From: Lama guanicoe
Taxonomy: Eukaryota
DNA: 64,000 nucleotides
Direction of reading: 5' to 3'
Assembly: GCA_013239625.1 (NCBI GenBank)
Contig: MU056146.1
Location: forward strand, 5,855,314 to 5,919,313
Both the position numbers and the translations under genes were made by a program. This document shows positions 2,605 through 3,581 of this stretch, one piece after another. The notes below the pieces were generated by a model, which did no database searches, was not told the DNA's origin, and was given only the letters and a program-made list of their open reading frames with translations. Position 1 is the stretch's first letter; every line of letters begins with the position of its first letter.

Positions 2605-3581
2605 GTCCAGCATCCAGGGCTGCTAGAGGCAGCAGCGCTTCCATTCCTTTCATTGACTGCAGTGACGTAGACAGTGAATCCGACCTTCTCAGGGAACACG
2701 CATCCCAGTCACGGTCCCAAACAAATGACAACTATGAGGGTGATTTGACCAGTGGTGTTTATCTGCTCTCCCGGGAGGAGAGGCGAATAGAAGCTAGGCA
2801 TTCTAGGGCTTCCCCGCACTCTGTGAAGTCCTCCCGGCCTCCTTCCAGAGAATTCCTTGACGATGATTCGGCAGACATATCCTTTGATGTGAGCGGGAGC
2901 CCCAGACTCCCAAGACATAGCTCTCTGATAGATGAGATGTTCGGGGGCTCAGGCAGCCACAGTCCCTTGGCCACCCCCTTATCTCCCAGCAGCAGAAGCT
3001 CAAGTCCAAATATGCCTTGGGGCCGGACCAGGTCTCAAGGCTATGTTTCCGAAAACGGACATGACCCTAGAGAGAGAAGTGTGGGAGAAGGTACTCTCCT
3101 AAGCCCGGGTCCTCATTACGAAAACTGTTCTCCCGTCTCACAAAGGCCGTATTTAAAGAGTCTTCCCGGTGGATACAATAAGTCAGAGACAGATCCACTC
3201 ATTCTTAGCCGGGGAGCATCAACCCCAGAGGCAGCAGGTAGGCTTGACGGCCCCGGAGAGGGAGGAGTGGTCGGCCCGGCTGGCTTGGAAGGCAGGACGC
3301 TGGCTAATGGGACCCCTCTCGTGGGTCCAGCCTCCAAGACCCTCACTGCGCAGGCAGCCCATACCAGTCGCCTGGGAGACCAGCTGGCCCCCCTGCAGGT
3401 GACCGAGGGCTCCACCAGCAGTGGGACTGAATCCAGCGATTCAGACTCTGAGATGGTGAGCCCTCTGAACCAGCCCCTCGTGTTTGGTAATCCAGCCGTG
3501 CTGGGTTCCCCCTGCGTGGAGAGGAATAAGAAGTCCCTGAGTGGCCTGCGTGTGAAGGAGGAGAGGGAGGAGAATGAGTGA
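2605..3581 (+). CDS. FARP1: Putative alternative terminal extension of FARP1 exon 13: in-frame read-through of 324 extra aa, Ser/Pro/acidic, FRMD7-like C-terminus
   Basis: Frame is open from 2355 to TGA 3579-3581 across a very weak donor; GC/CpG-rich up to the stop, then AT-rich; ends [12 protein letters not shown]...[15 protein letters not shown]. Confidence 0.72.

What the first reader, a model, noticed from the sequence alone, without database searches (positions are those of the whole stretch)
3423..3581. End of the hidden tail resembles the FRMD7 C-terminus, implying an ancestral two-isoform FARP gene
Seen: the tail ends [52 protein letters not shown]. From memory, human FRMD7 has [46 protein letters not shown] near its end. 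The two share ESSDS[DE]SE, then P..L.[FY]G, SP..R..S..L and an acidic end, in the same order. HSSLIDEMFG (about 2916-2945) also recalls FRMD7 KADLFTDMFA, though the spacing differs. Known: FRMD7 (X-linked infantile nystagmus gene) is the closest FERM-FA paralog of FARP1/2, lacks DH-PH and has a long tail encoded by its last exon. Inference: the ancestral gene made both a long GEF form and a short form; FRMD7 kept only the short form, while FARP1 still encodes both.
Basis: partly seen in the sequence, partly recalled or inferred. Interest (0 to 1): 0.88.

Follow-up and report, generated by a model that had tools for sequence, protein, structure and literature searches.

The report
FARP1 alternative tail resembles FRMD7 end
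The stretch is the last 52 codons of a deeply conserved alternative ending of the FARP1 gene that yields a protein without its enzyme half, and this ending is very probably the counterpart of the so-far "orphan" C-terminal region of the nystagmus gene FRMD7.

Summary
3423-3578 encodes the last 52 residues of a 325-codon frame that reads through the donor of FARP1 exon 13 (2604|2605) to TGA 3579-3581.

This tail is real coding sequence. It is annotated as the C-terminus of FERM-FA-only FARP1 proteins in many vertebrates, so the isoform is not hidden. The tail is predicted disordered.

No tool returned an FRMD7 sequence, so no tool-run alignment to FRMD7 exists. Four searches found none.

Indirect evidence for homology is nevertheless strong:
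- Papers confirm five residues of the recalled FRMD7 string in register.
- FRMD7's terminal exon 12 starts at the same position and phase (S[DE]V.KQ|) as FARP1 exon 13.

I put homology at about 0.8. An ancestral two-isoform gene is plausible (about 0.55). Fish and frog gene models that carry the tail inside the long GEF form give a rival.

Papers call the FRMD7 C-terminus homology-free, so the link appears unpublished.

The parts
1185..1260 (+). FARP1 exon 12 (just after the FA domain). It ends ...NSEVPKQ in phase 0, with donor GTCAGT at 1261.
   Evidence: tblastn of lemur and marsupial short isoforms; sequence and translation. The boundary is homologous to the FRMD7 exon 11/12 boundary.
2355..2604 (+). 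FARP1 exon 13, the part shared by all isoforms. Acceptor cag|TCTCAG, phase 0 start; donor ACAG|GTCCAG, ends in phase 1.
   Evidence: With exon 14 the split codon G|GC reads ...STG-SLTGSPH.
2605..3578 (+). Read-through coding tail (325 codons counted from 2604). It is a disordered Ser/acidic-rich C-terminal region of the GEF-less FARP1 isoform.
   Evidence: Open frame; 26 relatives by exhaustive phmmer; annotated short isoforms; end-to-end alignment; AlphaFold2 mean pLDDT 47.5 with no secondary structure.
2916..2945 (+). HSSLIDEMFG block, conserved in vertebrate FARP1 tails as PRHS[ST]L[IV]DE[MI]F.
3423..3578 (+). The finding: the last 52 codons. They hold an acidic serine cluster ([15 protein letters not shown]), then PLVFGNP, then the eroded placental version of [17 protein letters not shown].
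3579..3581 (+). TGA stop of the short isoform. It lies 12.7 kb upstream of exon 14, so the product lacks DH-PH-PH.
16318..16505 (+). FARP1 exon 14 (GSLTGSPHLSELS...), the partner of the 2604 donor in the long GEF form. DH and PH exons follow up to about 57.2 kb.

Best explanation
The window is the 3' half of a camelid FARP1 gene. When the donor of exon 13 (2604|2605) is not used, translation continues for 325 codons to TGA 3579-3581. The product has FERM-FA plus a roughly 400-residue disordered tail and no DH-PH-PH (GEF) part. Positions 3423-3578 are the end of that tail. They are the placental-mammal, partly eroded form of a C-terminal module conserved since the common ancestor of jawed vertebrates: [MI][16 protein letters not shown], then PL[VM][YF]GNP, then SSPMPRNK[FY][10 protein letters not shown].EED, then FSDEDG..VFSC-stop.

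This exon-13-plus-read-through unit is the FARP1 counterpart of FRMD7 exon 12. Both begin at the same phase-0 boundary after S[DE]V.KQ, and both run 364-408 codons to a stop. By recalled FRMD7 sequence they also carry collinear motifs and stop just after a [VY]F motif.

Shown: the open frame, its conservation, its annotation as a protein end, its predicted disorder, and the exon-boundary equivalence.

Inferred:
- Homology of the tail with the FRMD7 C-terminal domain.
- Function as a GEF-independent membrane and synaptic scaffold. The FERM-FA part would bind lipids, receptors and CASK-type partners, as FRMD7 and worm FRM-3 do.
- Regulation of the acidic serine cluster by casein kinase 2 (CK2)-type phosphorylation (S/T-x-x-D/E consensus).
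- A pre-duplication FARP gene that already ended a short form at this stop. FRMD7 kept only that form.
For: Reading frame and coordinates.

Conservation:
- Exhaustive phmmer gave 26 hits, down to E 2e-108.
- 154, 35 and 73 hits in the word-seeded searches. All the named ones are FARP1 or generically named FERM-domain / hypothetical entries; the unnamed fragments I read look FARP1-like. They include FERM-FA+tail proteins of Callorhinchus (751 aa), Acipenser, Xenopus (811), birds, Sarcophilus (785) and Prolemur (783).
- The window is 75% identical to the Prolemur tail by tblastn.
- MAFFT aligns the tails end to end, with the identities given.
- Pfam finds only FERM_N/M/C and FA in these proteins, and nothing in the tail.
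- AlphaFold2 on 26 sequences gives mean pLDDT 47.5 and no secondary structure.

RNA: five RNA-seq rows from two studies hold 0.43 of the sampled words of 2355-4400, of which the canonical exon is only 12%.

FRMD7 side, from papers:
- 714 aa, 12 exons, FA domain 288-336 (PMC3163398).
- NES L344-SDVSKQVEDLRL (PMC10830384).
- c.1050+1G>A is an intron 11 splice variant, so exon 11 ends after Q350 in phase 0. This matches FARP1 ...SEVPKQ| at 1260.
- Residues R600, L616, E629, D638, Q639, E654, Y666, K668, R678, L679 and T697 all fit the recalled sequence in register.
- L679fs*8, which removes only the last 36 residues, is listed among FRMD7 variants from nystagmus families.

Worm frm-3 makes a FERM-FA-only form and a GEF form, and its FERM-FA binds LIN-2/CASK (PMC7260190). 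It is called a homologue of FRMD7 as well (PMC7405782).
Against: - No tool gave an FRMD7 sequence, so the motif-by-motif comparison rests on a recalled sequence that papers verify only at scattered positions.
- FRMD7 did not appear among phmmer hits at E<=1e-3 with the camelid tail.
- It also did not appear among the 73 hits at E<=10 when the most FRMD7-like 85-residue block (sturgeon) was searched in the right length range. I cannot explain that absence.
- Part of the shared signal (ESSDSxSE, the acidic end) is low-complexity.
- The middle 200 residues of the two tails show no evident similarity.
- In placental mammals the last block has decayed, which may mean relaxed constraint.
Confidence: 0.72

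Rival explanations
1. Homology with FRMD7 is real, but the ancestor did not make two isoforms. The tail was an internal coding region of one long FERM-FA-tail-DH-PH-PH protein. The GEF-less forms then arose separately: FRMD7 by loss of the DH-PH exons, and the FARP1 short form by use of a stop and poly(A) site just past a distal donor.
For: Predicted long proteins of 1200-1420 aa in teleosts, sturgeon and Xenopus laevis carry nearly the whole tail, followed by the exon-14 sequence and DH-PH. Examples are P0060, P0033, P0035, P0036, P0047, P0055 and P0142. In them the tail is left only a few residues before the short form's stop.
Against: The short form's stop right after VFSC is kept from shark to birds. 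By recalled sequence FRMD7 also stops just after a [VY]F motif. C. elegans frm-3 already makes both forms. Several of the long models are automatic predictions, and one is flagged as unverified.
Confidence: 0.25
2. The resemblance to FRMD7 is convergent. Acidic serine clusters (CK2-type sites) and acidic ends are common in disordered tails, so the two tails share composition but not ancestry.
For: No FRMD7 came up in four protein searches. The camelid-only match is mostly ESSDSxSE plus scattered residues. [quoted passage not shown]
Against: The exon boundary and phase are the same, at the same distance from FERK. The FERM-FA parts are about 60% identical paralogs (PMC6041286).
Confidence: 0.13
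3. In placental mammals the read-through frame is a decaying relic that is no longer translated. Only the long GEF form matters in this species.
For: The last two conserved blocks are eroded or lost in camel, dolphin and lemur. The donor at 2604 is the annotated splice site of the canonical form. No reads could be laid.
Against: 325 codons remain open, with 74-77% amino-acid identity between camel, dolphin and lemur and no frameshift. RNA-seq contigs from two studies hold far more of 2355-4400 than the canonical exon alone. Ensembl-derived UniProt entries annotate the form in a lemur and a marsupial.
Confidence: 0.1

Closest known systems
Annotated GEF-less FARP1 isoforms (FERM-FA + tail, 720-900 aa), e.g. 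the UniProt/NCBI entries of Prolemur simus (783 aa), Sarcophilus harrisii (785), Xenopus tropicalis (811), Callorhinchus milii (751) and Acipenser ruthenus (721)
   Same: Same gene, same exon-13 read-through and same tail. The window is 75% identical to the lemur tail and aligns end to end with all of them.
   Different: Placental tails, this one included, end about 25 residues early and have lost FGSLQLDEE and FSDEDG..VFSC. I found no paper on the function of this form. The 'short isoform' of human FARP1 named in PMC7507005 ends at an alternative exon 3 and is a different transcript.
FRMD7 C-terminal domain (exon 12, residues 351-714 of the human protein; X-linked infantile nystagmus gene)
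   Same: It follows a FERM-FA module that is about 60% identical. It is encoded by one large last exon that starts at the homologous phase-0 boundary S[DE]V.KQ|. It has similar length and no DH-PH. By recalled sequence, checked at scattered residues, the motifs are collinear: SSSS.P[FY]I, an L..[DE]MF block, [LM][DE].ST...ESSDS[DE]SE, L[YF]G, SPM.R...S.GSLQLDEE, and a [VY]F..-stop end.
   Different: FRMD7 has no alternative splice to DH-PH exons. The middle parts do not align. The L..[DE]MF block sits much closer to the acidic cluster in FRMD7. No tool-run alignment was possible. FRMD7's partners (CASK, GABRA2, RhoGDI-alpha) are untested for FARP1-short.
C. elegans frm-3 (isoforms FRM-3A and FRM-3B)
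   Same: One gene gives a FERM-FA form with a domain-less tail and a FERM-FA-DH-PH-PH form. The FERM-FA part alone does the synaptic scaffolding, with LIN-2/CASK (PMC7260190).
   Different: I could not test whether the FRM-3A tail is homologous to the vertebrate tail, because no FRM-3 sequence was in hand.

Membership tests
GEF-less FARP1 short isoform | Exon 13 read through its donor into an open frame that stops before the DH exons | tested here: met
   Frame open 2355-3578, TGA at 3579-3581, exon 14 at 16318.
GEF-less FARP1 short isoform | Tail orthologous to the tails of annotated FERM-FA+tail FARP1 proteins | tested here: met
   75% identity to Prolemur, 60% to Sarcophilus and 40% to Callorhinchus over about 310 aligned residues.
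GEF-less FARP1 short isoform | Transcripts of this species that keep 2605-3581 and are polyadenylated downstream | tested here: inconclusive
FRMD7 C-terminal domain | Encoded by one large terminal exon that starts right after the FA region at a phase-0 boundary | tested here: met
   FRMD7 exon 11 ends at c.1050, after ...SDVSKQ. FARP1 exon 12 ends ...SEVPKQ at 1260, and exon 13 starts in phase 0 at 2355.
FRMD7 C-terminal domain | Statistically significant sequence similarity to FRMD7 residues 351-714 | not testable with these tools
   No FRMD7 sequence was returned by any tool.
FRMD7 C-terminal domain | Product lacks DH and PH domains | tested here: met
   The stop at 3579-3581 precedes all DH/PH exons. 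Pfam finds only FERM and FA in the annotated short forms.
FRMD7 C-terminal domain | Binds or co-operates with CASK, GABRA2 and RhoGDI-alpha; controls cytoplasmic localisation | not tested
   Needs experiments. These are literature facts for FRMD7 only.
Two-isoform FARP/FRM-3 gene architecture | One gene gives both a FERM-FA-only and a FERM-FA-DH-PH-PH product | tested here: met
   Both forms are encoded in the window. Both are annotated for FARP1 in other vertebrates.

The most novel reading that the evidence does not exclude
FARP1 of jawed vertebrates encodes, beside the Rac-GEF, a full FRMD7-like protein. Its tail is the long-sought relative of the 'orphan' FRMD7 C-terminal domain. The pre-duplication FARP gene already made this form, and FRMD7 is the duplicate copy that kept only it. 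The shared terminal module (acidic serine cluster plus SPM.R...GSLQLDEE) would be a functional unit. Its loss would explain why an FRMD7 frameshift at L679 is seen with nystagmus. FARP1-short could also back up FRMD7 outside the oculomotor and retinal circuits.
Probability: 0.5. Interest if true: 0.7.

Novelty: new member of a known kind. Interest (0 to 1): 0.55.

Why it matters
FRMD7 is a major gene for X-linked infantile nystagmus, and truncations in its last exon are treated as pathogenic. Reviews nevertheless describe its C-terminal half as having no homology to any protein, so there has been no comparative handle on it.

If the FARP1 alternative tail is its paralog, several things follow:
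- About 450 million years of FARP1 tail sequences mark which short motifs matter.
- The terminal 36-60 residues become a defined candidate module.
- The suggestion of Watkins et al. that FARP proteins cover for FRMD7 elsewhere in the brain gains a concrete molecule to test.
- Studies of FARP1 that use only the GEF form, or knock-outs that remove both forms, would need re-reading.

The isoform itself is already in databases, so the new element is the link to FRMD7, not the transcript.

Tried and rejected
- **Pfam on exon 13 + tail:** no family.
- **ESM Atlas on a tarpon tail:** no usable feature hit, and structural neighbours all at TM < 0.2.
- **PDB sequence search with P0026:** nothing.
- **Three word-seeded protein searches aimed at FRMD7:** whole tail of a 817-aa fish form; C-terminal 85 aa of a 1313-aa form; C-terminal 85 aa of a 721-aa form, whose length range includes 714 aa. 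The named hits are FARP1 or generic FERM-domain entries, and no FRMD7 appeared.
- **The look-up of encoding contigs:** The gene behind P0026 and the DNA of the distal donor in fish could therefore not be examined.
- **Comparison with FRMD7 letters:** this would have needed a typed, recalled sequence, so it was left out. Only short motifs are quoted here, marked as recalled.
- **Joined spliced model of the camelid short isoform:** the FERM exons lie outside the window. I neither built nor searched a joined model; exons were handled by reference.
- **STK24 exon downstream of FARP1 (57-64 kb, both strands):** I looked for one to support a paralogy argument and recognised none. The FARP1-STK24 / FARP2-STK25 / FRMD7-STK26 neighbour argument therefore rests on my own knowledge, plus the co-deletion of STK26 and FRMD7.
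- **Supplementary variant tables of PMC12811896:** not held.
- **Paper search for FARP1 with 'intronic polyadenylation':** nothing.

Full report
**What is in the window.**

The window holds the 3' half of a FARP1 gene on the + strand.
- tblastn of vertebrate FARP1 proteins places exon 12 at 1185-1260 and exon 13 at 2355-2604. It places exon 14 at 16318-16505 and the DH and PH exons up to about 57.2 kb.
- The nearest named protein is a Camelus ferus fragment, 96% identical, so the genome is a camelid.
- Exon 13 ends ACAG|GTCCAG in phase 1. If that donor is not used, the frame stays open for 325 codons to TGA at 3579-3581.
- By local composition an open run of 325 codons has P of about 5e-6. The other two frames hold 14 and 26 stops.

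**Is the tail real coding sequence?**

Yes.
- An exhaustive phmmer of the 325 residues against 1.84 billion representatives gave 26 hits, 16 below 1e-10.
- The word-seeded searches gave 154, 35 and 73 hits. All the named ones are FARP1, FARP1-like or generically named FERM-domain / hypothetical entries. The unnamed fragments I read carry FARP1-type features.
- Among them are complete FERM-FA+tail proteins of 720-900 aa. Species include Callorhinchus, Acipenser, many teleosts, Xenopus, a gecko, birds, Sarcophilus and Prolemur.
- Pfam sees FERM_N/M/C and FA in these proteins and nothing in the tail.
- MAFFT aligns the camelid tail end to end with all of them. Identity is 74-77% to dolphin and lemur, 60% to a marsupial, 54-55% to birds and 40% to elephant shark.
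- The 'hidden' isoform is therefore an annotated, deeply conserved, but apparently unstudied product.
- AlphaFold2 on a 26-sequence alignment gives mean pLDDT 47.5 and no secondary structure. The tail is a disordered region that carries short conserved blocks.

- The vertebrate consensus of the tail's end is [MI][16 protein letters not shown], PL[VM][YF]GNP, [8 protein letters not shown][FY][10 protein letters not shown].EED, and FSDEDG..VFSC followed by a stop.
- The camelid keeps the first two blocks almost intact.
- Its [23 protein letters not shown] is the eroded placental form of the third block. The fourth block is gone.
- A marsupial still has [17 protein letters not shown].
- Over the 52 residues, 26 are identical in elephant shark and 30 in birds.

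**FRMD7: what could and could not be tested.**

No tool returned any FRMD7 sequence.
- FRMD7 is absent from the phmmer hits at E <= 1e-3.
- It is absent from the three homologous-protein searches. These include one in which the most FRMD7-like 85-residue block (sturgeon) was searched in a length range that contains 714 aa. That search scored 130 candidates, and 73 passed E <= 10.
- I cannot tell whether FRMD7 was a candidate that scored below threshold after composition correction or was never collected. I record this as evidence against the claim and as unexplained.
- A comparison with typed FRMD7 letters was left out, as the rules require.

**Indirect evidence that the recalled FRMD7 string is right and that the resemblance is homology.**

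1. Variant tables and text in papers fix human FRMD7 residues.
   - R600, L616, E629, D638, Q639, E654, Y666, K668, R678 and T697 come from PMC12811896.
   - L679 comes from PMC11182149.
   - The stretch L344-SDVSKQVEDLRL comes from PMC10830384.
   - The shark-to-marsupial FARP1 tails that the tools then returned read [18 protein letters not shown].EED at the aligned place.
   - By eye, about half of the 45 positions of the recalled string are identical to a bird FARP1 tail, including the non-repetitive part.
   - This comparison is made by eye against a recalled sequence. It is not a computed statistic.
3. Gene structure, which needs no recalled letters.
   - c.1050+1G>A is listed as an intron 11 splice variant (PMC3163398). 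FRMD7 exon 11 therefore ends after codon 350, that is ...SDVSKQ| in phase 0.
   - Exon 12 then runs 364 codons to the stop of the 714-residue protein.
   - In the window, FARP1 exon 12 ends ...SEVPKQ| in phase 0 at 1260.
   - Exon 13 plus the read-through runs 408 codons to the stop.
   - The terminal exon of FRMD7 thus begins exactly where FARP1 exon 13 begins.
4. The FERM domains are about 60% identical (PMC6041286).

From these I put homology of the two tails at about 0.8.

**Evolutionary reading.**

Points that fit a pre-duplication gene already ending a short form at this stop:
- A shared terminal unit in two paralogs.
- A stop kept right after VFSC from shark to birds.
- The worm gene frm-3, which makes both a FERM-FA-only form and a GEF form (PMC7260190). 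It is called a homologue both of FARP1/2 and of FRMD7.

The rival scenario is not excluded.
- Long predicted FARP1 proteins of teleosts, sturgeon and Xenopus laevis contain nearly the whole tail and then continue into exon 14 and DH-PH.
- There appears to be a second, distal donor a few codons before the short form's stop.
- The ancestral tail could therefore have been an internal region of a long protein.

**Likely mechanism.**

Shown: the product lacks the GEF half and ends in a disordered, acidic, serine-rich tail with conserved short motifs.

Inferred:
- The FERM-FA part targets membranes and receptors, as in the long form. If it behaves like FRMD7 and FRM-3, it also binds CASK-type scaffolds.
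- Without DH-PH it can act only as a scaffold or as a competitor of the GEF form.
- The cluster S-x-x-[DE] repeated in [15 protein letters not shown] fits the consensus of casein kinase 2 (CK2; established knowledge). This suggests phosphoregulation.
- For FRMD7, the C-terminal half is needed for cytoplasmic localisation and for RhoGDI-alpha binding together with the FERM part.
- A frameshift at L679 that removes only the last 36 residues was reported in a nystagmus family. That segment corresponds to the best-conserved end of non-placental FARP1 tails.

**Expression in this species.**

- Five RNA-seq rows from two studies hold 0.43 of the sampled words of 2355-4400. The canonical exon makes up only 12% of that stretch.
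- This fits read-through transcripts but does not exclude unspliced RNA.

**Known or new.**

- The transcript is in databases.
- My searches found no paper that links it to a FARP1 isoform.

Noticed in passing
proteins P0060, P0033, P0035, P0036, P0047, P0055, P0142 (no window coordinates): Predicted long FARP1 forms of teleosts, sturgeon and Xenopus laevis (1200-1610 aa) contain almost the whole tail and then continue into the exon-14 sequence and DH-PH. This implies a distal donor a few codons before the short form's stop, and hence a third isoform class. Placental tails have lost that end.
   Followed up: partly
protein P0026 and its 76-member Logan cluster (no window coordinates): A divergent relative of the proximal tail (NDNDEDD..., EEFIDDDPAEISFF) also has a distal TEDSSSTDTDSWDSE...LFFSNPF stretch. 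Scores were phmmer E 8.5e-4 library-wide and hhalign E 1.5e-4, probability 52%. It could be the FARP2 equivalent of this tail.
   Followed up: partly
window 3582-11460: The first AATAAA after the stop is at 4954, with further signals up to 11437. RNA-seq contigs hold 43% of the words of 2355-4400. Where the short transcript ends was not determined.
   Followed up: no
window 27737-27865 and 38471-38588: Two runs of N (129 and 118 bases) lie inside FARP1 introns.
   Followed up: no
window 60000-64000: AT skew rises to +0.17 to +0.24 past the FARP1 3' end, as expected for the 3' UTR of a gene on the minus strand. No coding exon was recognised there.
   Followed up: partly
teleost proteins P0144, P0149, P0153, P0160, P0058, P0056: A second teleost FARP1 paralog keeps the tail's start and its last 90 residues, plus a SRAERMAALERRM.ANGLS block, but has lost the middle blocks. 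This points to the two ends as the constrained parts.
   Followed up: no
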